Below, piece after piece: positions 1,382 through 64,000 of a DNA stretch of 64,000 nt. Under the pieces are notes generated by a model that had not been told where the DNA came from, searched no databases, and saw only the letters and a program-made list of their open reading frames with translations. The DNA lies in assembly GCA_002269645.1 (NCBI GenBank), contig NIVC01000700.1:124001-188000 (forward strand). Reading direction: 5' to 3'. The position numbers were made by a program, and so were the translations under genes. This DNA comes from Macrostomum lignano. Its lineage: Eukaryota. Positions within the stretch are counted from its first letter, which is position 1, and every line of letters starts with the position of its first letter.

Positions 1382-4300
1382 TCAGACAGCCACAGCCGAT
1401 GTCGGCTCTCGACCTTCATCGGCCGCAGCCGAATCCTGGCCGTTCCGTCGCTTGCATTTCTTTGTGGCGCAGAGCAGGCGGCCCTCCAGCAGCATGTAGA
1501 ACAGGTCGAGCAATTCGCACAAGGTGAGCAGGCTGCAGCCGATGTAGAGGCCCAACAGGCCGCCCGTGTCAGCAAGAAAAGCAGTCCAAGAGTACGAGGC
1601 CGACAGCACAACTAGAGGTGACCGGGCGGAGGAGCCCCAGACGCTCACCCGCAGATGTGACTCGGCCACGTAGGAGCGAAACAAACTCTCCAGGTGAGCC
1701 GAGTGACCGCCCGGTTGCAGCAGCTGGCGGGCCATCCGAGTGAGCCGCCATCGGGCTGGCGCCTCCGCCTCCGAGACTGCCTGATGCTCCTTGGCGAAGT
1801 AACCAATTGTGGAGCTGCCAACGCCAGGCCAGCGGCCGAACGAGAACACGGCCCGGTAGGAACGGGAATGGCAGGGGATTCGTTTGGAGCAGCTGGCGCT
1901 GGCCTGCTTATCAATCTGGGTGGTCTCCTCCAGACTGGCCGAGCGAAGTCTGGTCAGCACCGCGCTGGACGCCTCGGACAGGTTGAGGCACCTCGGCCAG
2001 GCCCGGTGCTCCCAGAACAGGGGATAACCGGACGGCTGGCAGCCGAACGCGTTAATAAACAATTCGTGCTTGTGACGGTGAAAACAGGTCAGGTGGTTGT
2101 AGTGAAACTCCAGCGGTCTTTCTGCAAGCCAATGGGTTGAAAATAAAAGTCAGATGTGATTAAAGTAAGCTGAATAATAACTGTGCCTGAAATTTAACCT
2201 TAAGAAAATGCCCCAGCGAGAGAGCCATGATACTCACCTGTCAGGTGATCCCGGTAAATAACATCCGGTGAGCCAGGCACGCATTCGTTTCCGTGAAGCT
2301 CCTCGCTGGCGGCGCTCTCCTCCATCTCCAGCGCTACCGAGTAACCGTTGCCAGGAGCAACCAGGAAGCTGCTGCTTGGCGCCACCATCGGATATTCACC
2401 CGGCGGTACCAGCATCATGGTGTAGCCGGAGATCTGAAGCCAATAATAGTTAAGTCTTTTATGAGAGAAAAAGAAACCGAACAAGCAAATTTGTTTTGTT
2501 CTGAGTTTTCCAGACTTTATGATCTCTGAACAAAAAAAATAGAATACGCTGAGTCAGTTCACAAAGACATCAACGTCACAGGGTGCGTCTCAGAGCCTGG
2601 GCGTGAACGTAGGCTACATAGTGCACTACTCCTCGCGCCGATGGCAGCAACGCCTCCTGCACAGTCTGTGGGCGGTACATGCGGTACTCGGCGAGGATGA
2701 TATGGCTGGACGGATTAGGCCAGCGCGGTCATACGCTCGTACAGTGCCGGGTTGGAAACCCTCTCGTCGCCGATCTCGCAGGCACCGTCCAGGTCTAATC
2801 ATTGGATGGTAGTAGATGGTAGGATCTCGGACTGCATGGCTGGCCTCACAGAACGAAAAGCAGCCCAGGCAAGCCCGCGGCGACGCCGCAAATCCCGCGG
2901 ACGTCGGGAACCATCTCTTAAAATGTTGTGGCTATGAAATCTTTTAAACGTACGTAGCTTGGTTGTCTTTGCGGTTTTGTTGATTGTGAGGTTGTGTACA
3001 ATGTTCTACTGATCCTAGAACTTTTGCCCCATGTACATGGACATGTATAGATTAGCAGACGCTTGTTATCAGCCCTTCCGCTCTCCCCATGTAACTAGGT
3101 GTAAAGTTTTTCAGAGCAAAACGTGTGAGATACAAGTAAAAAGTCTGAAAACCTCTGAGTAATCGACGGCTCAATTTACGAGCATAGTGAATTTTCGTGT
3201 TGTTTTCCAACATTATGGTCATCTCATATTAAGCAATAAGCAGCAGCTCCTGACGGTAAGCATTGCAACCTGCCTTTAAGTCCTCGGCCCCTCCAGCATG
3301 CTGCCATTCAGTGAACTCCAGCGACTCGTTACCGAGTCTGTCTTTGATCGGCCGAATCGACTCTCCGGTATAGTTGAAGTCTGAGAAGTACGGATCTGTA
3401 GACAGCCACACGTGCAGGACGCTGCCGCTTGTCTGCATGTGCTGGCGCAGCTTTGGTGTGAGCACCGGCCGAAAGCAGATCAGGTTAGTCGGGTGGTAAA
3501 ACTCCTCCATAGCCACCTGGTCGACCCGGAAGTGACTCACCAGCTCGCTGCGCAGCACCGACTGCAGCTTGCGCAGCGCAAGGTACCTGGTTGGGGTCGA
3601 TCAAATCACATTATGCAATTTGCGACATTCACAAGAAGAATCGCATACTGAAATACAGCAGTCATTATAATAATATTTAAATAAAACTCGAGCGCATGTG
3701 TCCACAGGTGAGGTCCTGGCTCAACGGTTGATAACTTTTGACACGAGTAAGAAATTAAAAACCGACCTTGGCCTGACTGTTGGGCACACATGTAGAAGAT
3801 CATAGCCACCTCTGGATGATAGTAAGAATTGTTCCATTTCATGTTTACTCACCCCTGCTCAGCCCATGCACCTTGCGCAAGTACAACTTCGCAGGCAAGT
3901 CCCTGCTCTATGAAGGCCTATCTCTACAAAGCCTATCCCATACCATGCACCCACCTGATCGCCATGCCAACAGGCAGCGAGTTCTGAATAGCGGAGGCTT
4001 TGAGCAGCACATCGCTGTCATTTGTCTGGCTGTCGTACAGACTGCTCAACCGAGCCACTTCGTCATTCACAGCTTTCGCTTCCGCACTACTCAACGAGAA
4101 CGGATAACTGCCCGAGTACTGACTGTTCGGACAAAAGTACAGCTCGGGAAACACGAAAGACACGCGGCCAGCCTCGTAGGTCGAAGTCAGCTCCACACTC
4201 TGCAGCTTCTTCACGAGGCCCCTGGCCGTGTTAAGAAATAGACCAAGAAACACGGCGAACAGGATTGCCCACATCGCTTTGAGCGGGCCAGCCTTGGTAA

Positions 4301-4385
4301 TTGCCACTCTGCTAATGCCGTGAGCTGTGCTGGTGGTCAGCGCCTCCATCAAGAGTTCATATTTTGTCTTACCGGCGTAGGCCAT
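1382..4385 (-). CDS. DEG/ENaC (ASIC/FaNaC-like) amiloride-sensitive channel subunit; exons approx. 4385-3955, 3902-3853, 3811-3778, 3586-3274, 2433-2238, 2121-1382
   Basis: N-terminal TSTAHGISRV (HG motif) followed by TM1 WAILFAVFLGLF. Also FPELYFC, FYHPTNLICFR, EYPMVAPSSSFLVAPG, and TM2 FLADTGGLLGLYIGCSLLTLCE (GxS filter). Splice phases are consistent; exon 3 boundaries and the exon 4 donor are provisional. Confidence 0.88.
2550..2930 (-). mobile_element. Degenerate non-LTR retrotransposon (RTE-like) C-terminal remnant in an ENaC intron
   Basis: Minus-strand frameshifted peptides DERVSNPALYERM and SHIILAEYRMYRPQTVQEALL resemble, from memory, the post-RT tail of RTE-like LINEs. No search was run. 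Confidence 0.45.
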
Positions 4386-7374: not shown

Positions 7375-10300
7375 ATGTACCCGCCCGAACTTCAGCGATT
7401 TGACTGCATTTCGACAAGTGCCGAGAAACCATTACAATGGGAGCAAAGGTCGACAAAATCTGCTTCGTCCATCATTTTCCCGAAAAGATTGCAGCTATCC
7501 GATGTCCCGGTTCAGCAGAGGAAAAAATCCTACATGGATTGCATCTACCGACAGCGCGTAACCATCAAGCGACTTCAAGACCAGATCGCCAAGGCAAAAG
7601 CAACAAAATTCAAAAGTGCGACAATGAGTCGAGTGATTCAGAGCAGCATCAAGCAGCAGTTTGTTGATTCCCGTGGAATGCGATGGTCAAAGAAAAGTAT
7701 TTCCGAATCTATCCAGCTGCACCACAAGAGCCCAGCTGCCTACCGAATGCTGCGCAACAAGTGGAATTTTCCACTTCCATCCGAGTCATCGCTGAAGCGG
7801 CGAACCCGGCAGTTCTTTTCATCCCCTGGTGTCTGCCAAAAAACGATCAAGCTGTTGCATGAAAAGCTTGCTAATGACCCCGAGCCACAGCGACTAGCAA
7901 CTCTCTGCTTGGATGGCATGAGTTTATCAGCCAGCATCCGCTACGACCATCATGGTGACCGAGTCGTAGGCTATGATGAACACTCTGCTGAGGACCTTGA
8001 GCAAAATCTTCAGAGACCCGTAAACGAAGCCGTTGTTGCTGTTCTCCGTGGAATCTGGAGCAACTGGAAGCAACCAATTGCATACTATCAAGTACATAGA
8101 ACCCTCGGTCAGCTTCGATTTAAGTCTGCGATAGACGAGTGCCTTCGCGCTGCCCATGAAGCTGGAGTTCGGGTTGTCGCACTGGTTGTTGACCAAGAAA
8201 CTACACAATGGGCCTACCTCAGCAAACTGGTGAGTTCAGTACTTTAATGATATAATCCCTTATAAATATTAAAGCATAGAGGAAATAATGCTCAAGTTTG
8301 GATATATTAAAAATTTATTTCGCACTAAAAATTATATTGCTATTGTTTCGAGATTTAAAACTTCAAAATAAAAAAATCAATGTTATTTGTGCCAGTAAAC
8401 GTTTTGATTACTTTAAGCCTTGCAACTTTTTATTTGTTTAGGTAAATCCTGCGGCTCCATTTCTAAACCATCCTGTGACACAAAAGCCCATATTTGTGAT
8501 TATCGATGTCCCGCACTGCCTAAAGAATGCGCGCAATGCCCTCATGAAGAACAACATCATTTTCGATGGAGACAAGCAAGCAAGATGGCAAGACCTAGTC
8601 GACTTCTACGAAAGGGACAGCAGCCGATCGCTTAGACTGGCGAGTCGGCTGAGCGATGCGCACTTCAACCTTCAATTGGGCCAGAAAATGAAGGTCTCCC
8701 TAGCCGCTCAGATCTTTAGTCACTCGGTTGCCAGCGGAATCAAGACACTAGTGCATCATCAAGAACTGCCTATCGATGCCTTGCAGACAGCAGATTTTGT
8801 GCAGAGAGTCAATGATGCATTCGACTTGTTGAATTCAACGCACATTTTTGACAAAGGATTTAAGCAGCCGATCACGCGAAATTCGCTTGCAGAGAAGATT
8901 GACGAGTTGCGCAGCGTCGAAGCCTTCATCAGAAGCTGGCAGTTCCTTCCTAGCAGCGGAAAGTCGCTAAAGGCGACTATGAAATTCAAAGAAGCATTGA
9001 TTCTGTCGACTTCTGCAATACGACAGCTCAGCACAGCGTTGATTCAAGATGAGCACTACGAGTTCGTGTGCACGCGAAGACTAACACAGGATCACGTTGA
9101 GGTGAGTTACCTTGATACTCGTACTTTAAATCAAACATTTTACAAATGTATAAATAGTGTAATCACAGGTGCAAAGAGCAATAGTACTTAGCTGAAATAT
9201 GTACTTCTAATATACCATATTGATGCACGCACAGAGTCAGATGACTCATCAGTCACAGAATCAGATGACTCAAGTCACTGAATCAAATTCAATGAGATGC
9301 CACTGCTCAAGGGGGAATCAATGAGGACTGACTGACTGACTGACTGACTGACTGACTGACTGACTGACTGACTGACTGACTGACTGACTGACTGACTGAC
9401 TGACTGACTGACTGACTGACTGACTGACTGACTGACTGACTGACTGACTGACTGACTGACTGACTGACTGACTGACTGACCTGACTGACTGACCTGACTG
9501 ACTGACTGACTGACTGACTGACTGACTGACTGACTGACTGACTGACTGACTGACTGACTGACTGACTGACTGACTGACTGACTGACTGACTGACTGACTG
9601 ACTGACTGACTGACTGACTGACTGACTGACTGACCTGACTGACTGACCTGACTGACTGACTGACTGACTGACTGACTGACTGACTGACTGACTGACTGAC
9701 TGACTGACTGACTGACTGACTGACTGACTGACTGACTGACTGACTGACTGACTATCTAAAGTTGTAAATTTATTTAAAGTAAAATGCATGTATAAACTTG
9801 AATTACAGAATCTGTTCTGCATCATCCGTGGCCGCAATGGCTTCAACGAAAAGCCTGAGATTGCAGCGTTTCTTGGGCACTGCGATCTGTAGCTGCCAGT
9901 GGCCTCTCCCAGCCAGATTCTGCGGCCAGAAACTGCGAAGACGACGGCTGTGTAGCTGCAGTCACAGCAGACTGTGCAGCTGTTGAACTCAGCACGACCA
10001 GCACGTCTGCCGCGAGTGATTCAAAGGCTGATGATCGGGGTGATGCGACTATTTCCAAAATATTGATACAACAAGAGCAGCCGGCTCATGATTCAATTCT
10101 AGAAGAAGCGACCGAGTATGTGGGCGGCTTTGTGCTCAATAAGAGTGGCGTCCTGGAATGCCAGAGCTGCAAGTTGGTTTTGACTGCTACGAATCCTACT
10201 GGAGTGCATCTACGGCATAAGACGCTGTCTCACGCGGTCTGTGGCCTAAAACTGCCTTCGCCAACTGCACTGCAAAGCTTTAACAAAATGGAAGCCATCT

Positions 10301-17549: not shown

Positions 17550-18505
17550 CTCCAATCCTACATCCCAGAATCCCAATCCTACATCCCAGAATCCCAATCC
17601 TACATCCCAGAATTCCGATCCTACATCCCGAAATCCCAATCCTACATCCCAGAATCCCAATCCTACATCCCAGAATCCCAATCCTACATCTCAGAATCCC
17701 AATCCTACATCCCAGAATCCTAATCCTGCATTCAAGAATCCCAATCCTACATCCCAGAATCCCAATCCTACATCCCAGAATCCCAATCCTACATCCCAGA
17801 ATTCCGATCCTACATCCCGAAATCCCAATCCTACATCCCAGAATCCCAATCCTACATCCCAGAATCCCAATCCTACATCTCAGAATCCCAATCCTACATC
17901 TCAGAATCCCAATCCTACATCCCAGAATCCTAATCCTGCATTCAAGAATCCCAATCCTACATCCCAGAATCCCAATCCTACATCTCAGAATCCCAATCCT
18001 ACATCCCAGAATCCCAATCCTACATCTCAGAATCCCAATCCTACATCCCAGAATCCCAATCCTACATCTCAGAATCCCAATCCTACATCCCAGAATCCCA
18101 ATCCTACATCTCAGAATCCCAATCCTACATCCCAGAATCCCAATCCTACATCCCAGAATCCTAATCCTGCATTCAAGAATCCCAATCCTACATCCCAGAA
18201 TCCCAATCCTACATCTCAGAATCCCAATCCTACATCCCAGAATCCCAATCCTACATCCCAGAATCCCAATCCTACATCTCAGAATCCCAATCCTACATCC
18301 CAGAATCCCAATCCTACATCCCAGAATCCTAATCCTGCATTCAAGAATCCCAATCCTACATCCCAGAATCCCAATCCTACATCTCAGAATCCCAATCCTA
18401 CATCCCAGAATCCCAATCCTACATCTCAGAATCCCAATCCTACATCCCAGAATCCCAATCCTACATCTCAGAATCCCAATCCTACATCCCAGAATTCCAA
18501 TCCTC
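17550..18505. repeat. 21-bp minisatellite (CCCAATCCTACATCCCAGAAT)
   Basis: Directly visible; it generates the spurious CRIGILG ORF. Confidence 0.95.
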
Positions 18506-18618
18506 CATTCCAAAAAACTATTTCTTATAGCTACAGATCCCAGTTCTCAAGCTGTGCCGCTCTGCATTTATAACTCAACACTCATCTCAGTGCCTAAACT
18601 GCGATTCTCCAGCTCGCA

Positions 18619-32845: not shown

Positions 32846-35117
32846 CTAACGCTCCCGAAAAGCCACCATTTGCAAACGTGTCGAACTCATTGCTAATTCA
32901 ACACCCTGCTGTGGCCAACCCCAATGCTGCCTGCTCTGTTGGGTGAGGCGCGCTCCTATCCGCATCAGAATCAACTTTAACCTGAATATTTTCTCTGTCA
33001 CAGGGCATTCCCCAATCTGTTGAATTGAATAATGCTTATTTTAAAATAGCGAAATTCGCTTCACTCTACTAACAGTAAGCTGTCTAGTAATGGCCAATAC
33101 TTCTCTTCCCTAGTTTATACAAGCGAACAAATAATATTCAATTCACGCTTTCCTGCAATGGCCTAATATAATGTATTCTTGATTAGCACTACCGTTATTA
33201 TAGATTGATTATATGCAGTTATTATCTGGATGTCCGTTTTATTAATCATTCTATATGCTTTCAACTGCTTTGTTCCATAGGCTGACTTGGAATGTTTATG
33301 TCAGCTTTGGCTCACTGTGTACATGTCAGTTAATGTATTAGTACACATAACAATAATACTAATGCGAGCAGTGTGATTGCTCGGCTCCTATTGCATGCGT
33401 TAAAGTTTTGACAAATCATATTGCCTGTTATTGTTCCTTAATCAATATAGTATATTGACATATTTTATTCTGATCTTAATAAACCTGCTTGCCAGTCCGG
33501 GTGTACAGAGTTGTGTCGCGCGCGCCGCCACAATCCGTTAATATTGCGCTCGGTTTAATTGAAAATCTCCTATTTTTCAGACCAATATTTTGTTATTATA
33601 TTCAACGCAGCAGTCGTGACTGTTTACTAATAAGTAGAAATTATGAAAATTTCCAGTTAAAATCATCTTACCATAAAAAATAAGTAATAAAGCTGGTTTT
33701 TAGATAGCTATAATACTAGCTATAATACTAGCTAATTTAATACATCGAGACTGGAGTCTGAAATCTTCTCAGAACTATTTTTCGAGTTCCAAGTTGAGAA
33801 GTTTGGTAGCTATTGGAATTTCTTAATCTAGTTTCCACTGGTAAGACCTAAACCAACTCACTTGAAAGTTCAAAGTTTGAAAGTTCAAGTGAGTTGTGGA
33901 GAATTTATTCATCTTTAAAATGGATCAGACTTGAAACAAATATGCATGCCTTGGCGTCTGGGCCGGCCGTCATCATGCAGTTAACATAACTTAATCAAGC
34001 GATTTCATTGTTGATCTAGATTGACTCATTTTGCTAATATAACATTAATATTACTTTTTGCGGGCATCAAGGTAGAATTGCCCTCACAAAATTCTACATT
34101 GATGCCCCGCAAAAAGTAATGTTTATATTATTATCATTAATGCAAGAGATTTCCAGACATCAATGTCGAAAATTCCGGGCTCTGTGTTATTACATAGAAT
34201 GCAGTTGAAATGTCTATGGCCATTCTTTCTTTTGATTTGCGAGCTCTGGGCCATAGACGAAGTTTTGATGGTCCAGGTCTAGAGATGGACAGTAAAACTG
34301 AAGGAGCTAGAAAAATGCTAAATGTATATTTTTCAAATCTGTCAGGACTAAGCTGTGCTTGAGTTCTGAAAATGATCAATCATTTAATTAATTATTCCAA
34401 TCTGCCGGGAGAAATGGTTTCCGGTATGTCGACCGAAGAGCTGGCGTGGGTATCATCCGAGTCGAACAGCCGGTATTTGGAGGAACTGAGCGAAGAATTT
34501 GCGCGCAAGATAGAATCAGAAGAGATTCTCGACATTCCGGAGGACGTGATGCAAGAGTTAAATCAGCTTGAATGAGATGGAATACCGGACTCCTCCGCCC
34601 GGCAGATGGAGGACAATAAAAACTGACACTATAAGTTTCCAAGTTAATCTTACCTCTTACCTCTCTGTTTTACTTCTTACTTAATTATCCTATTAAAAAC
34701 TATACTTCCTTGCTTCTGACAAAAAGGCTCTCTATAGAAGGCCATTCATCTAGGTTCCAGATCTCGATGACTCAGTTTTCCTCCCTCTTGTTGAAAATTG
34801 TCTATCACCACTTACAAGTGTTCGAGCTGCGTCATTCTACTTAAAGTAGAGTTATTTGCGCATTTAAATCGGTCACATTGTGTTCTTTTTTAACTGGATT
34901 GTTTCGAATTGAAAAAAGTTTATACAATGATTTATTTTAACAGAAAAAGCGAGAAGCCTTTCTAAAAGCAATTGGCTTGTTTCCTGCGATCTTTTCATAT
35001 TTAGTACCATTTGATAAGTCTTTTGATGCGAGACGGTCGACACTATGAAAACGAAGGCTTTTGATATGCATGTCGCTTAGTTACTTTATAAAAAAGTGTT
35101 TAAATTTAAAATACTTT

Positions 35118-35308
35118 ATCGCTTCTCGGCCTTATTGGCTAAGATCAAAGTGTAGTTTCTGTTCTTTAGAGATAATTCCTCTAACGTAGGCCATTGGTCT
35201 ACTAAGTAATTAATCCGGTTTTTGATGAGTCGGGCCAGTGCTTCGTGTTCACACGACCTGGTCCACGCGTAGGCCTTGCGCTGCAGTACAGCAAGGATCT
35301 GCGCATCT
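35118..35308 (+). ncRNA. U2: U2 snRNA, full-length reconstituted variant copy
   Basis: Starts ATCGCTTCTCGGCCTTATTGGCTAAGATCAAAGTGTAGT. Stem IIa TTAGAG/CTCTAA, stem IIb GTAGGCC/GGTCTAC, Sm-like GGTTTTTG, stem III, and stem IV CCTTGC/GCAAGG with a TGCAGTAC loop. Confidence 0.93.
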
Positions 35309-35707
35309 AAAAAAAAAAAAATAATGAAAGCGGAGGCATGGCAGTATCAAGGAGTACTGTACATGTATATAGCCATGTACAGTGGTCCTTTGGGTGGTAG
35401 GAAGAACGTAGAATACCGACGTCAGATGCAAAACTGACGCGGTCGACCTCCCTGTGCCTTCGCCTGATCGCCCGCGGTATCCACGCGCCCTTCTCTCTCG
35501 TTGCTCTTTGCTTCCCCTTTGACTTTTGCTCCTGTTTTCACCCGTCTACATCATACATTTTACATTTTATGTATCTATTTATCATTTATTTCATCCTCCT
35601 TTACCTTTTTAATCATTTCGACTCACTTTTCTATCCTATCCTTTCGTTTTCGCTTTTCTTTTACTTCTACTCTCGTTTTTATCCCCAGATATCCTTTTCC
35701 TCTAAAA

Positions 35708-37029
35708 TCTTGGTTCCAAGTCCGCCACGCCACCCGCGAAGTGCTCCACGCGACCGGGCTGCGCTTCACCATCAGCAACGACTGGACGGCCAGCCTGGAG
35801 TGGCGCGACCCGCTGTCCGGAACTATCCAGCGCTGTGACAGAGCGGCAGCAATCACCCGGAGGCTTCACCAGGTGGTCAGGGCAGCGCACACGGCGGCCT
35901 GGCGCGGGTGCCACTCCCAAGGCCGATTCGCCACGACTGCCACGCACATCGGCAGCCACACCTGGCTGTTCAGCAGCACCGGCATGCGCGCCTGCGACTG
36001 GCGCTTCATCCACCGAGCGCGGCTCAACCTGGTGCCCACCAACGCACTCCGGAGACTGGCCGACCCGACATCCGACCCGCGATGCCGCCGCTGCGGAGCC
36101 GGCGTCGAGACGCTCGGCCACGTCATCAACAGCTGCCCGGTGCACGCGGCCAGGTGGAGAGACCGCCACGACGGCATCGTCAACGCCGTCGCCACCGCCA
36201 TCAGCGAGGCCCGCCCAAACGCGACCATCACCACCGACCAGGAGGTCCTTCCCGGCTCTGATCTGCGACCTGACATCAGCATCATGGATCCAGACAGAGG
36301 CCGCCGCCTCCTGATCGAAGTCAAGTCGCCGTTCGAGGTCGGGCCGGCCACGTTCCCACGCAAGCACCGAGCCGTATGCCAGAAGTACGCCGGCATCACG
36401 CAGCAGCTCAGCGCAGAGGCGCCAACGGCCCTGGCCACGTTCTGCATCGGCTCGCTGGGTGCCTGGTCGCCCTTCAACAACGCCATCCTGCGCGCTGCAG
36501 GCCTGCGCGAGCGCGACATCCGGCACCTCCAACGACGACTGGCGCTGCACTGCATCCACTGGAGCCGCAACACGTGGGTGGAGCACTGCACCGGCGCACC
36601 TCAAATCCACTGATTTTGTGCCGAACTCTGCCAAACTCTGCTCATCTCAGCCCACCCTGTTACCTTTACTTTTACCTGTTTTATTTATCTTCCACTCTGC
36701 ATTTTTGTTTTACTTTGTTTTTCTTTAATATTTTACTTTTTACTGTCTCGAAGTTCATGCACTCTGTAAGCATTTTTCGCTGTGATTCCGCCTCTCGCGC
36801 CCATCCCCGCCGCCACCCCGTCTCCTGCGCCTTCACTTTTTCCCACTGTTTTAATTGCATTTACTTCAATGTTTTACTGTTTTACGCATCCTGCGAACCC
36901 GTTTTTAGCTACTTTCAGTAGCATCATCGGCTCTTGGCCAAATATTTCTGCTTATATCGCTTATTGTGTTTAATACTTAAATATATTGCCCGACCGTCGG
37001 ATACTCGGCCGACGGGCAGGGCCTTTCGC
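35708..37029 (+). mobile_element. 5'-truncated RLE-type non-LTR retrotransposon inserted in U2 (Utopia-like); ORF remnant to the stop at 36613 plus a 416-nt 3'UTR
   Basis: Contains WRFIHRARLN, CCHC knuckle CRRCGAGVETLGHVINSC, RHDGIV, and RLE nuclease RPDI...IEVKSPFE...KY. The 3' end abuts TCTGTTCTT of U2. There is no RT domain. Confidence 0.92.
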
Positions 37030-37181
37030 TCTGTTCTTTAGAGATTAATTCCTCTAACGTAGGCCATTGGTCTACTAAGTAATTAATCCGGTTTTTGATG
37101 AGTCGGGCCAGTGCTTCGTGTTCACACGACCTGGTCCACGCGTAGGCCTTGCGCTGCAGTACAGCAAGGATCTGCGCATCT
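37030..37181 (+). pseudogene. U2: 3' part of the interrupted U2 snRNA gene
   Basis: Near-identical to 35158-35308 and starts at TCTGTTCTT. Confidence 0.92.
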
Positions 37182-37631
37182 AAGAAATCTAAAATAATGA
37201 AAGCGGAGGCATGGCAGTATCAAGGAGTACTGTACATGTATATAGCCATGTACAGTGGTCCTTTGGGTGGTAGGAAGAACGTAGAATACCGACGTCAGAT
37301 GCAAAACTGACGCGGTCGACCTCCCTGTGCCTTCGCCTGATCGCCCGCGGTATCCACGCGCCCTTCTCTCTCGTTGCTCTTTGCTTCCCCTTTGACTTTT
37401 GCTCCTGTTTTCACCCGTCTACATCATACATTTTACATTTTATGTATCTATTTATCATTTATTTCATCCTCCTTTACCTTTTTAATCATTTCGACTCACT
37501 TTTCTATCCTATCCTTTCGTTTTCGCTTTTCTTTTACTTCTACTCTCGTTTTTATCCCGAGATATCCTTTTCCTCTAAAATCTTTTTGAAATGCGCTCCC
37601 GCCTTCTTTTTTGCTTCAAATTGCTTTAACA

Positions 37632-37784
37632 TTCGCCGCCCCCGTGCGACACCGTGACGTCGCCGACTTCCTGAATGGCGCGACGCTACCACCAAGCGGC
37701 GGGACATCCAGCTGGTGGTTTCAAGTGCGCCACGCCGTCCGAGAGGTCCTGCAGCCGCTTGACCTGAAGGGTTTTTTGCCTTAG
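37632..37784 (+). mobile_element. Short remnant of a second, diverged Utopia-like ORF
   Basis: Reads DVADFLNG...SSWWFQVRHAVREVL versus SWFQVRHATREVL at 35709. The differences are mostly synonymous. Confidence 0.78.

Positions 37785-41479: not shown

Positions 41480-64000
<22,521 letters not shown>

What the first reader, a model, noticed from the sequence alone, without database searches (positions are those of the whole stretch)
35118..37584. U2-targeting retrotransposon insertion that rebuilds the U2 gene through a 554-bp duplication
Seen: [U2 1-40][U2 41-end + about 400-bp flank][1.3-kb 3' end of an RLE retroelement][U2 41-end + same flank]. Segment 35158-35711 is repeated at 37030-37584, and the element 3' end sits exactly at GTGTAGT(A)|TCTGTTCTT. 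Known: RLE-type Utopia elements insert at this U2 site next to the branch-point recognition sequence and would normally split the gene; R2-like target-site changes are usually short. Inference: either an unusually long TSD or template jump onto a U2 read-through transcript, or a mobile chimeric unit (U2 + pyrimidine-rich linker + Utopia tail). Such a unit would be a SINEU-like non-autonomous passenger transcribed from the U2 promoter that restores a full-length U2 each time it inserts. That would be a host-sparing, self-promoting U2 retro-module.
Basis: partly seen in the sequence, partly recalled or inferred. Interest (0 to 1): 0.9.

Follow-up and report, generated by a model that had tools for sequence, protein, structure and literature searches.

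The report
Utopia insertion with 554-bp U2 duplication
A truncated copy of a retrotransposon that targets the U2 spliceosomal RNA gene sits between two 99%-identical 554-bp copies of its target, so a full-length U2 copy stands upstream of it; that copy has a changed base in its branch-site-binding motif, and nothing shows the structure is mobile as a unit.

Summary
A full-length U2 lies at 35118-35311. Segment 35158-35711 (U2 nt 41-end plus a 400-nt 3' flank) recurs at 37030-37584 with 98.9% identity. Between the copies lies 1,318 nt: the last 300 codons and the 3' UTR of an R2-like (RLE) retrotransposon. It has no reverse transcriptase and no poly(A). Its 3' end abuts TCTGTTC, the junction seen in more than 25 relatives, so it is a 5'-truncated Utopia.

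New points:
- The rebuilt U2 reads GUAGUU instead of the invariant GUAGUA, changed at the base next to the insertion site.
- A second, diverged Utopia fragment (about 37638-37775) lies just beyond the right copy.
- Relatives show target duplications starting at the same nick, of about 27, 28, 33, 50 and 175 nt.

Best reading (about 0.5): one insertion event duplicated 554 nt of target, an extreme target-site duplication. Main rival (about 0.3): pre-existing tandem U2 units, with upstream target deleted at insertion, as proposed for Phytophthora. The mobile SINEU-like module has no support (about 0.05). This is a new variant of a known kind, of moderate interest.

The parts
35085..35096 (+). 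TATA-like motif TTTATAAAAAAG at -33 to -22 of the U2 start; possible proximal promoter element
   Evidence: Read from the sequence. This is inference only; no promoter model was tested.
35118..35157 (+). U2 nt 1-40, present once. The last base (35157) is T where every other intact U2 examined has A (GUAGUA becomes GUAGUU).
   Evidence: Rfam alignment. The pattern search finds this 5' part only once in the window. Intact sites in relatives read GTAGTA|TCTGTTC.
35158..35711 (+). Left copy of the duplication: U2 nt 41-end (35158-35311) plus a 400-nt 3' flank (35312-35711). The flank holds a 42-nt palindrome at 35349-35390; its last 272 nt are 76% pyrimidine.
35711..36613 (+). C-terminal 300 codons plus stop of a Utopia/R2-like protein: linker, CCHC zinc knuckle and PD-(D/E)xK restriction-like endonuclease. 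No reverse transcriptase. The first base is shared with the flank.
   Evidence: Best database relatives are 37% identical. Conserved DWRFIHRARL, CRRCG...H...C, RHN, RPD, V(K/T)xPF and KY motifs. The profile matches the R2 protein C-termini 9nl3, 9dou and 8gh6 at E 2e-35 to 2e-14. An HMM built from relatives alone scores 224 bits.
36614..37029 (+). 3' UTR of the element. It is pyrimidine-rich, has a stable hairpin near the end (36988-37022, -22 kcal/mol in a 60-nt fold) and no poly(A).
37030..37584 (+). Right copy of the duplication: 5'-truncated U2 (nt 41-end, 37030-37184) plus the same 400-nt flank
37585..37637 (+). Continuation of the U2 3' flank that is absent from the left copy (42% GC)
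37638..37775 (+). Fragment 'B': a diverged piece of a related Utopia ORF (APVRHRDVADFLNGATLPPSGGTSSWWFQVRHAVREVLQPLDLKG, then a stop). It overlaps and extends 29 residues upstream of the point where the main element is truncated.
   Evidence: Nucleotide match of 30/38 to 35711-35748. tblastn 12/18 aa, E 0.006 in the window. An HMM of relatives alone ranks it as the second-best hit in the six-frame window, E 0.023, HMM positions 45-85.

Best explanation
A 5'-truncated, dead-on-arrival copy of a Utopia-type (U2-specific, restriction-like-endonuclease) non-LTR retrotransposon inserted by target-primed reverse transcription at the canonical nick in a U2 gene. The nick lies between the branch-site-binding GUAGUA and UCUGUUC. 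The upstream junction was not closed within a few bases or about 20-30 nt of the nick, as in relatives. Instead it formed 554 nt downstream of the nick. U2 nt 41-end plus 400 nt of 3' flank was therefore copied once more and now flanks the insert on both sides, as an extreme target-site duplication.

The template for the extra copy could have been the target's top DNA strand (staggered breaks, or a jump of the cDNA end onto downstream target DNA). It could also have been a read-through U2 transcript of the same locus. The data do not separate these two.

The by-product is a full-length U2 copy with its promoter side and 3' flank intact. It carries a scar (A to T) at the base next to the original nick.

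What is shown: the anatomy, the family, the junctions and the scar. What is inferred: that the duplication arose in the insertion event.
For: 1. The duplication starts at the exact base where more than 25 relatives have their 3' junction (|TCTGTTC). It ends at the exact 5' end of the insert, with 1 nt or less of microhomology.
2. Only one U2 5' part exists in the window. No similarity is found between the sequence upstream of the U2 and anything downstream, and there is no third U2 even at E<=5.
3. The only departure of the first 47 U2 nt from the consensus outside a loop is at 35157, the base next to the nick. All intact sites in relatives read GTAGTA. With about 0.5-1% divergence between the copies, a random hit on that base has a chance of about 1% or less (my estimate).
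4. Relatives show target duplications that begin at the same nick. These are about 27 nt in L005 (a full-length element); 28 nt in L027, with a later re-insertion into the regenerated site; three [Utopia][U2 39-58/62] units in the scorpion locus L002; a 33-nt tandem duplication of U2 39-71 in L001, the closest relative; about 50 nt in L048; and about 175 nt, U2 39-end plus about 25 nt of flank, in L063. Reptile Utopia elements make 20-bp TSDs.
5. Hundreds-of-bp TSD-like duplications have been observed de novo for an RLE-bearing LINE, Dualen-4b (median 900 bp), and 126 bp for R9.
6. Both polarisable differences are derived in the left, full-length copy: the stem-loop IIa deletion and the base at position 40. 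This would fit low-fidelity synthesis of that copy.
Against: - No empty allele, orthologous locus or second copy could be examined. Every anatomical feature except the scar is equally predicted by two pre-existing tandem U2 units plus an upstream deletion.
- U2 tandem arrays are the rule in the hosts of relatives. The spacing is 865 nt in L001, the unit is about 1.85 kb in termite locus L012, and the spacing is about 860 nt in P. infestans.
- The usual duplication in relatives is 20-33 nt, so 554 nt would be an outlier.
- Fragment B, 53-131 nt beyond the right copy, would need a second event of similar size at the same locus plus a later deletion of its 3' part.
- The scar is a single base.
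Confidence: 0.5

Rival explanations
1. Pre-existing tandem U2 units plus target deletion. The locus held two or three tandem U2 units of roughly 0.8-0.9 kb. The element inserted at the canonical site of the second unit, and the 5' joining removed the rest of spacer 1, promoter 2 and U2 nt 1-40 of unit 2. Fragment B is the remnant of an older, independent Utopia insertion into a third unit with a similar upstream loss. This is the explanation Kojima and Jurka gave for Phytophthora arrays.
For: - In Phytophthora, intact U2 genes rather than 1-38 fragments lie upstream of Utopia. That was interpreted as deletion on integration.
- True arrays exist there, with truncated U2 followed by intact U2 about 860 nt downstream. 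They also exist in the host of the closest relative (L001) and in a termite host (L012).
- The known length of the spacer here (at least 450 nt past the U2 end) fits inside such a unit.
- B is explained naturally as a second hit in the next unit. Different Utopia families share one array in Phytophthora.
Against: - There is no trace of a second promoter copy or a third U2.
- It needs extra events: a duplication or triplication of the unit, then two deletions of about 250-300 nt.
- It does not predict the changed base next to the nick in an untouched neighbouring gene.
- In termite relatives the corresponding breakpoints lie about 25 nt and at most 125 nt after the U2 3' end, in a spacer of about 1.6 kb. 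That is unlikely for random deletion end points.
Confidence: 0.3
2. Mobile chimeric module. U2 plus the 400-nt linker plus the Utopia tail is a non-autonomous unit. It is transcribed from the U2 promoter, mobilised in trans by a full-length Utopia, and restores a U2 at each insertion.
For: - The order U2-linker-tail would be co-transcribed if transcription read through the U2 3' end.
- The tail keeps the 3' UTR and terminal hairpin that an RLE reverse transcriptase would need.
- A second linker-to-Utopia transition (B) exists next door.
Against: - There is a single copy in 64 kb, and the linker 24-mer is absent from the metagenome collection.
- B joins the flank at least 53 nt further along, and joins the ORF 29 codons further upstream. 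It is about 21% diverged from the main element, while the two flank copies differ by 1%. The two are therefore not copies of one unit.
- In 77 related loci, no U2-Utopia chimeric junction is shared between loci.
- The flank downstream of the truncated U2 is the same as the 'linker', as expected for a local duplication. It would be expected for a unit landing in another U2 gene only if that gene had the same flank.
- There is no poly(A) and no SINE-like copy signature.
Confidence: 0.05
3. Later rearrangement or assembly error. An ordinary insertion (U2 1-40 | element | U2 41-end) was reshaped afterwards by unequal exchange or repair. Alternatively, an assembler joined an empty and a filled allele.
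For: - The locus lies in a window packed with minisatellites (88 tandem-repeat rows), which is difficult to assemble.
- The six differences between the copies could be allelic.
Against: - The flank-to-element junction at 35711|35712 has no sequence overlap that an assembler or homologous exchange could use.
- The two copies differ, so they are not a trivial duplication of reads.
- A reshaping would still need a non-homologous join at exactly this point.
Confidence: 0.07

Closest known systems
Utopia, U2 snRNA gene-specific RLE non-LTR retrotransposons (Kojima and Jurka 2015, PMC4640811)
   Same: The 3' junction is the same, before U2 TCTGTTC. The C-terminal CCHC plus restriction-like endonuclease is present. 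The 3' end is precise and has no A tail. The 5' junctions are variable. In Phytophthora, intact U2 genes have been reported upstream of elements.
   Different: The reported duplications are 0 bp (arthropods) or 20 bp (reptiles). Here the duplication is 554 bp, covering the rest of the gene and 400 nt of flank at 99% identity. The protein is only 37% identical or less to anything retrievable.
Exceptionally long target-site duplications of RLE-bearing LINEs: R9 of bdelloid rotifers (126 bp) and Dualen-4b_cRei of Chlamydomonas (median 900 bp, seen de novo; PMC9977147)
   Same: A direct repeat of target sequence, hundreds of bp long, immediately flanks a LINE insertion.
   Different: Those are regular properties of their families and were seen in many copies. 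Here there is one locus, in a lineage whose relatives usually duplicate 20-33 nt. The duplicated target here is a functional RNA gene.
SINEU, snRNA-headed SINEs of crocodilians (Kojima 2015, PMC4494074), and L1-mediated U6/U2 chimeric retrocopies made by template switching
   Same: An snRNA sequence is joined upstream of a retrotransposon 3' part. Template switching is a candidate origin.
   Different: SINEUs are multi-copy, have poly(A) tails, are linked to Tx1 (APE-type) elements, and carry snRNA sequence only, with no gene flank. Here the join is 400 nt past the U2 3' end, there is no A tail, and there is no evidence of more than one copy.
R2 5'-junction variation and template jumping
   Same: 5'-truncated copies have irregular upstream junctions and one-base microhomology.
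   Different: R2 target changes are a few bp up to tens of bp.

Membership tests
Utopia (U2-specific RLE non-LTR retrotransposon) | 3' end joined to U2 immediately after the branch-site-binding GUAGUA (before UCUGUUC) | tested here: met
   The junction is 37029|37030 ...TTTCGC|TCTGTTCTTT and the U2 register is confirmed by Rfam. More than 25 homologous elements from metagenomes, and L001, have the same |TCTGTTCTT junction.
Utopia (U2-specific RLE non-LTR retrotransposon) | C-terminal CCHC zinc knuckle and PD-(D/E)xK restriction-like endonuclease | tested here: met
   C125, C128, H137, C142, R152-H153, D188 and K225-Y226 are invariant in the alignment of 18 sequences. The profile matches the R2 protein C-termini in the PDB at E 2e-35.
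Utopia (U2-specific RLE non-LTR retrotransposon) | Reverse transcriptase domain, or an autonomous partner in the same genome | not testable with these tools
   This copy starts about 1,040 residues into a roughly 1,200-1,340-residue protein and has no RT. Full-length relatives L004 and L005 have RVT_1. The source genome could not be searched.
Utopia (U2-specific RLE non-LTR retrotransposon) | Sequence relationship to the named Utopia families (Repbase) | not testable with these tools
   No Repbase copy was available. The proxy used was that protein relatives found by sequence are themselves inserted at the U2 site.
Target-site duplication made at insertion | Direct repeats abut both ends of the insert and begin at the first-strand nick | tested here: met
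   35158-35711 and 37030-37584, at 98.9% identity
Target-site duplication made at insertion | The empty site holds the sequence once | not testable with these tools
   No other allele, genome or reads were available. A scan of the metagenome collection for the flank found nothing.
Target-site duplication made at insertion | Other insertions of the lineage show duplications from the same nick | tested here: inconclusive
   Short duplications (27-33 nt) are clear in L005, L027, L002 and L001. Longer ones (about 50 and about 175 nt) occur in L048 and L063, but those too could be arrays with deletions.
SINEU-like snRNA-headed non-autonomous retroelement | Many copies sharing one head-body junction | not testable with these tools
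   There is one copy in the window. No junction is shared among the 77 related loci. The source genome was not available.
SINEU-like snRNA-headed non-autonomous retroelement | Poly(A) tail and mobilisation by a Tx1/APE-type partner | tested here: not met
   There is no A tail at 37029, and the tail is from an RLE-type element. SINEU features are taken from PMC4494074.
Functional U2 snRNA gene | Full-length match to the U2 covariance model, with Sm site and 3' stem-loops | tested here: met
   134.1 bits over model positions 1-192
Functional U2 snRNA gene | Invariant branch-point recognition sequence GUAGUA | tested here: not met
   35152-35157 reads GTAGTT. All intact U2 sites in relatives and in P. 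infestans read GTAGTA, with one exception in P. infestans that changes the following base.

The most novel reading that the evidence does not exclude
Long target duplications may be a regular, if infrequent, outcome of Utopia integration. Each such event would rebuild a complete U2 gene with promoter and 3' box upstream, and leave a truncated U2 behind. The element would then neither use up its low-copy essential target nor its own landing site. That would explain three observations: truncated U2 copies outnumber intact ones, intact U2 genes are found upstream of Utopia, and several Utopia families persist on about ten U2 genes. The last is the puzzle left open by Kojima and Jurka 2015. A stronger form is that the U2-linker-tail product is itself retrotransposed.
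Probability: 0.12. Interest if true: 0.75.

Novelty: new variant of a known kind. Interest (0 to 1): 0.45.

Why it matters
Utopia elements live in a low-copy, essential gene. How they persist there without exhausting intact U2 genes is an open question, raised in section 11 of Kojima and Jurka 2015. An insertion that duplicates the rest of the gene and its flank shows one way the target, and the host gene, could be regenerated by the insertion itself.

This locus shows the structure cleanly, with 99% identical copies and exact boundaries. It also shows the limit of the idea. The regenerated copy carries a change in the one hexamer that U2 needs to bind the branch site, so a benefit to the host is not demonstrated.

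If the tandem-array explanation is right instead, the locus is an ordinary example of what was described in Phytophthora, now seen in an animal.

Tried and rejected
- Homology between the 400-nt flank and the element's 3' UTR. Both are pyrimidine-rich. The local alignment has z = 2.8, below the best shuffle, so no homology is shown. The flank is also not similar to the sequence upstream of the U2 or downstream of fragment B.
- A third U2 or a promoter copy. None was found at Rfam E<=5 or by motif search.
- Other element fragments in the window. tblastn with 29 proteins and an HMM search of all six frames found only fragment B.
- Finding the source genome or more copies. The element's protein has no near-identical entry in the 5.8-billion-protein collection; the best hit is 37% identical. 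The linker 24-mer has no match in metagenome contigs.
- Identifying the species from a Piezo exon. Two protein searches returned nothing, although the exon matches Piezo1 structures at E 5e-23. The organism stays 'an animal'.
- Capture of the cDNA end guided by homology to fragment B. I rejected this as the direct cause of the junction, because every version predicts that the 131 nt at 37585-37715 would also be present in the left copy, and they are not.
- A second cleavage site resembling the target. The sequence around 37584 (AAAATCTT|TTTGA) matches the U2 site at only 7 of 13 positions, by eye. I do not regard this as meaningful.
- A shared chimeric junction among relatives, as a test of mobile modules. 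None was found.
- The Rfam alignment of the element's last 26 nt to U2 stem-loop I. I treat this as forced by the full-length alignment. Relatives' 3' ends show nothing similar.
Full report
**1. What is there**

Rfam finds a complete U2 snRNA at 35118-35311 (134 bits, model positions 1-192). It finds a second match at 37004-37184, whose real U2 part begins at 37030 with UCUGUUC.

A blastn of the region against the whole window aligns 35158-35711 with 37030-37584. The alignment has 555 columns at 98.9% identity, and nothing else in the 64 kb resembles any part of the structure. Each repeat copy consists of U2 nt 41 to the end plus 400 nt of 3' flank.

The copies differ at six positions, which amount to about three events:
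- one T fewer in the stem-loop IIa loop of the left copy;
- four substitutions within 7 nt just behind the U2 3' end (A13 in the left copy, AAGAAATCTAAAA in the right);
- one C/G difference.

Between the copies lie 1,318 nt (35712-37029). This comprises a 300-codon reading frame at 68% GC ending at 36613, and a 416-nt pyrimidine-rich 3' UTR. The UTR has a stable hairpin near its end and no A tail.

**2. What the insert is**

The 300 residues have only distant relatives, 37% identity or less. These come from metagenomes, a scorpion, a tick and a coral. The alignment shows the motifs of the C-terminal part of R2-type proteins: DWRFIHRARL, a CCHC knuckle (CRRCG...H...C), RHN, RPD, V(K/T)xPF and KY. 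A profile of the alignment matches the C-termini of solved R2 proteins (9nl3, 9dou, 8gh6) at E 2e-35 to 2e-14. Full-length relatives encode 1,202-1,341 residues with an RVT_1 domain. The window copy begins at about residue 1,040, so it has no reverse transcriptase and is a 5'-truncated, non-autonomous copy.

Family membership was tested through the relatives. In the contig of the closest relative (L001), and in more than 25 of 75 related metagenome loci, the element's 3' end is followed directly by TCTGTTCTT..., confirmed as U2 by Rfam. That is the Utopia insertion site. The insert is a Utopia.

**3.

*A changed base in the rebuilt U2.* The rebuilt U2 is not pristine. The base before the junction, 35157, is T, so the branch-site-binding hexamer reads GUAGUU.
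- The extra A in CAAAGUG is a natural variant, present in intact U2 genes of termite-associated loci.
- The extra base in the stem-loop I loop is in a variable loop.
- That leaves the base next to the Utopia nick as the one deviation in the conserved 5' region.
- All intact U2 sites in the related loci read GTAGTA.
- The left copy also lacks one loop base of stem-loop IIa that the right copy and the Rfam consensus have.

*A second Utopia fragment, B.* Just beyond the right repeat copy, after 53 more nt of flank, lies a second Utopia-like fragment at about 37638-37775. Its translation is APVRHRDVADFLNGATLPPSGGTSSWWFQVRHAVREVLQPLDLKG, then a stop.
- It matches the first 38 nt of the main element at 30/38, and the first 18 residues at 12/18.
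- An HMM built from relatives alone ranks it second in the whole six-frame window (E 0.023). That alignment reaches 29 positions upstream of where the main element starts.
- B has no 3' part, and no third U2 follows it.

**4. How relatives join their 5' ends**

Small deletions:
- U2 1-30| in L012
- U2 1-36| in L077

Short duplications starting at the nick:
- about 4 nt in L053
- about 27 nt in L005, a full-length element
- 28 nt in L027, where a second Utopia then entered the regenerated site
- three tandem [Utopia][U2 39-58/62] units in a scorpion locus (L002)
- a 33-nt tandem duplication of U2 39-71 behind the closest relative (L001)

Longer duplications:
- about 50 nt in L048
- about 175 nt in L063, where U2 39-187 plus about 25 nt of flank stands on both sides of a truncated Utopia
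- L007, where U2 up to its 3' end plus at most 125 nt precedes a near-full-length element

Published values are 0 bp for arthropods and 20 bp for reptiles. Duplication from this nick, which regenerates the landing site, is therefore common in animal Utopia elements. The window would be the long extreme. No chimeric junction is shared between loci, so in this sample such products are one-off events and not mobile families.

**5. Explanations**

*Insertion-coupled duplication (best, about 0.5).* Target-primed reverse transcription started at the canonical nick, and cDNA synthesis stopped or lost its template about 1.3 kb in. The upstream join formed 554 nt downstream of the nick, so U2 41-end plus flank was copied a second time. 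The extra copy was made either from the top strand of the target or from a read-through transcript of the same gene.
- This needs one event for the main structure.
- It fits the duplication series in relatives.
- It has precedents of 126 bp (R9) and a median of 900 bp (Dualen-4b, observed de novo).
- It predicts a possible scar at the old nick. The A-to-T change is there, where a random hit has roughly a 1% chance or less given 0.5-1% divergence between the copies (my estimate).

*Tandem array plus deletion (about 0.3).* This is the explanation Kojima and Jurka gave for intact U2 genes upstream of Utopia in Phytophthora.
- Arrays are real in Phytophthora (truncated U2, then an intact U2 about 860 nt on), in the host of L001 (865 nt) and in a termite host (about 1.85 kb).
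- The model accounts for fragment B as a second hit in the next unit.
- Except for the scar, it predicts the same anatomy.
- Against it, no promoter copy or third U2 survives, and more events are needed.
- In termite loci the corresponding breakpoints sit within 25-125 nt of the U2 3' end, in a spacer of about 1.6 kb. That is unlikely for random deletions.

*Mobile U2-linker-tail module (about 0.05).* No second copy is known. B joins at a different place and is about 21% diverged, while the flank copies differ by 1%. There is no poly(A). The downstream flank equals the 'linker', as a local duplication predicts.

*Later rearrangement or misassembly (about 0.07).* The non-homologous junction at 35711|35712 is not something an assembler or a homologous exchange would create.

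**6. What stays unexplained**

The main element's truncation point falls inside the roughly 140-nt stretch of the ORF that fragment B covers. For a random truncation of a roughly 4.5-kb element the chance is about 3%. This hints at a link between B and the 5' join. However, every homology-guided scheme I tried predicts that the 131 nt at 37585-37715 would also be in the left copy, and they are not. The clustered substitutions in the A-rich tract behind the U2 3' end are also unexplained.

**7. Limits**

The source genome could not be reached. The element's protein is not in the protein collection, and the flank is not in the metagenome collection. The organism is an animal, since the window holds Piezo and DEG/ENaC exons and a P-element/THAP9-like transposase. 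It was not identified further.

**8. Verdict**

This is a Utopia insertion with an unusually long, 99%-identical duplication of its U2 target, a new variant of a known kind. The claim that it spares the host is weakened by the GUAGUU change. The claim of a self-propagating U2 retro-module is unsupported.

The locus is still a good entry point to a real open question: how U2-specific elements persist on so few targets. The needed test, a search of the genome for this flank and this junction, is simple.

Noticed in passing
window 37638-37775: A second, diverged Utopia ORF fragment (B) lies just past the right repeat copy. It overlaps the point at which the main element is truncated, and has no 3' part or U2 behind it.
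   Followed up: partly
window 35152-35157: The branch-site-binding hexamer of the only full-length U2 in the window reads GTAGTT instead of GTAGTA. The change is at the base next to the Utopia insertion site, and would also alter the element's own target sequence.
   Followed up: partly
window 35312-35325 versus 37185-37197: Four of the six differences between the repeat copies fall within 7 nt right after the U2 3' end. The left copy has a pure A13 run and the right has AAGAAATCTAAAA.
   Followed up: no
window 35349-35390 (and 37222-37263): A 42-nt palindrome about 40 nt downstream of the U2 3' end folds into an 11-bp perfect stem (-25 kcal/mol as RNA in a 61-nt context). It could be a transcription-end or processing signal of the U2 gene.
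   Followed up: no
L001 1235-1300: In the contig of the closest relative, U2 nt 39-71 is tandemly duplicated (2 x 33 nt) directly behind the element's 3' end, with nothing between the copies. This could be the footprint of an aborted or lost insertion with a 33-nt staggered cut. A further U2 1-28|insertion junction lies 830 nt downstream.
   Followed up: partly
L002 6484-15407 (Centruroides sculpturatus scaffold KZ493916.1): Three Utopia copies lie in tandem, each followed by only 20-26 nt of U2 (nt 37/39 to 58/62). This is the pattern expected from repeated insertion into a site regenerated by a duplication of about 24 nt.
   Followed up: partly
L075 2199-3259: A Utopia 3' fragment on the + strand lies between two U2 copies that are both on the - strand. 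This is the opposite orientation to every other locus.
   Followed up: no
window 54940-55560 and 60521-61153 (+); 1382-2062 and 3933-4385 (-); 7375-9191 (+): The window holds exons of a Piezo-type channel gene, exons of an amiloride-sensitive (DEG/ENaC) channel gene, and a P-element/THAP9-like transposase (TNP-like RNase H and GTP-binding domains). The host is therefore an animal. The U2/Utopia locus may lie in an intron or upstream region of the Piezo gene.
   Followed up: partly
whole window, e.g. 49951-54795, 43946-45188, 17552-18512: Minisatellite density is extreme, with 88 tandem-repeat rows, including a 33-nt unit repeated 147 times over 4.8 kb. Many of the long 'ORFs' in the window are artefacts of these arrays.
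   Followed up: no
window 35501-35710: The element's reading frame stays open for 70 codons upstream into the pyrimidine-rich flank. This is expected from the lack of purines and is not evidence of coding. The first in-frame ATG is inside the element, just before DWRFIHRARL.
   Followed up: no
window 37004-37029: Rfam aligns the last 26 nt of the element (CTCGGCCGACGGGCAGGGCCTTTCGC) to U2 stem-loop I (CTCGGCC...GGC). This is probably forced by the full-length alignment, since relatives' 3' ends show no such resemblance.
   Followed up: partly
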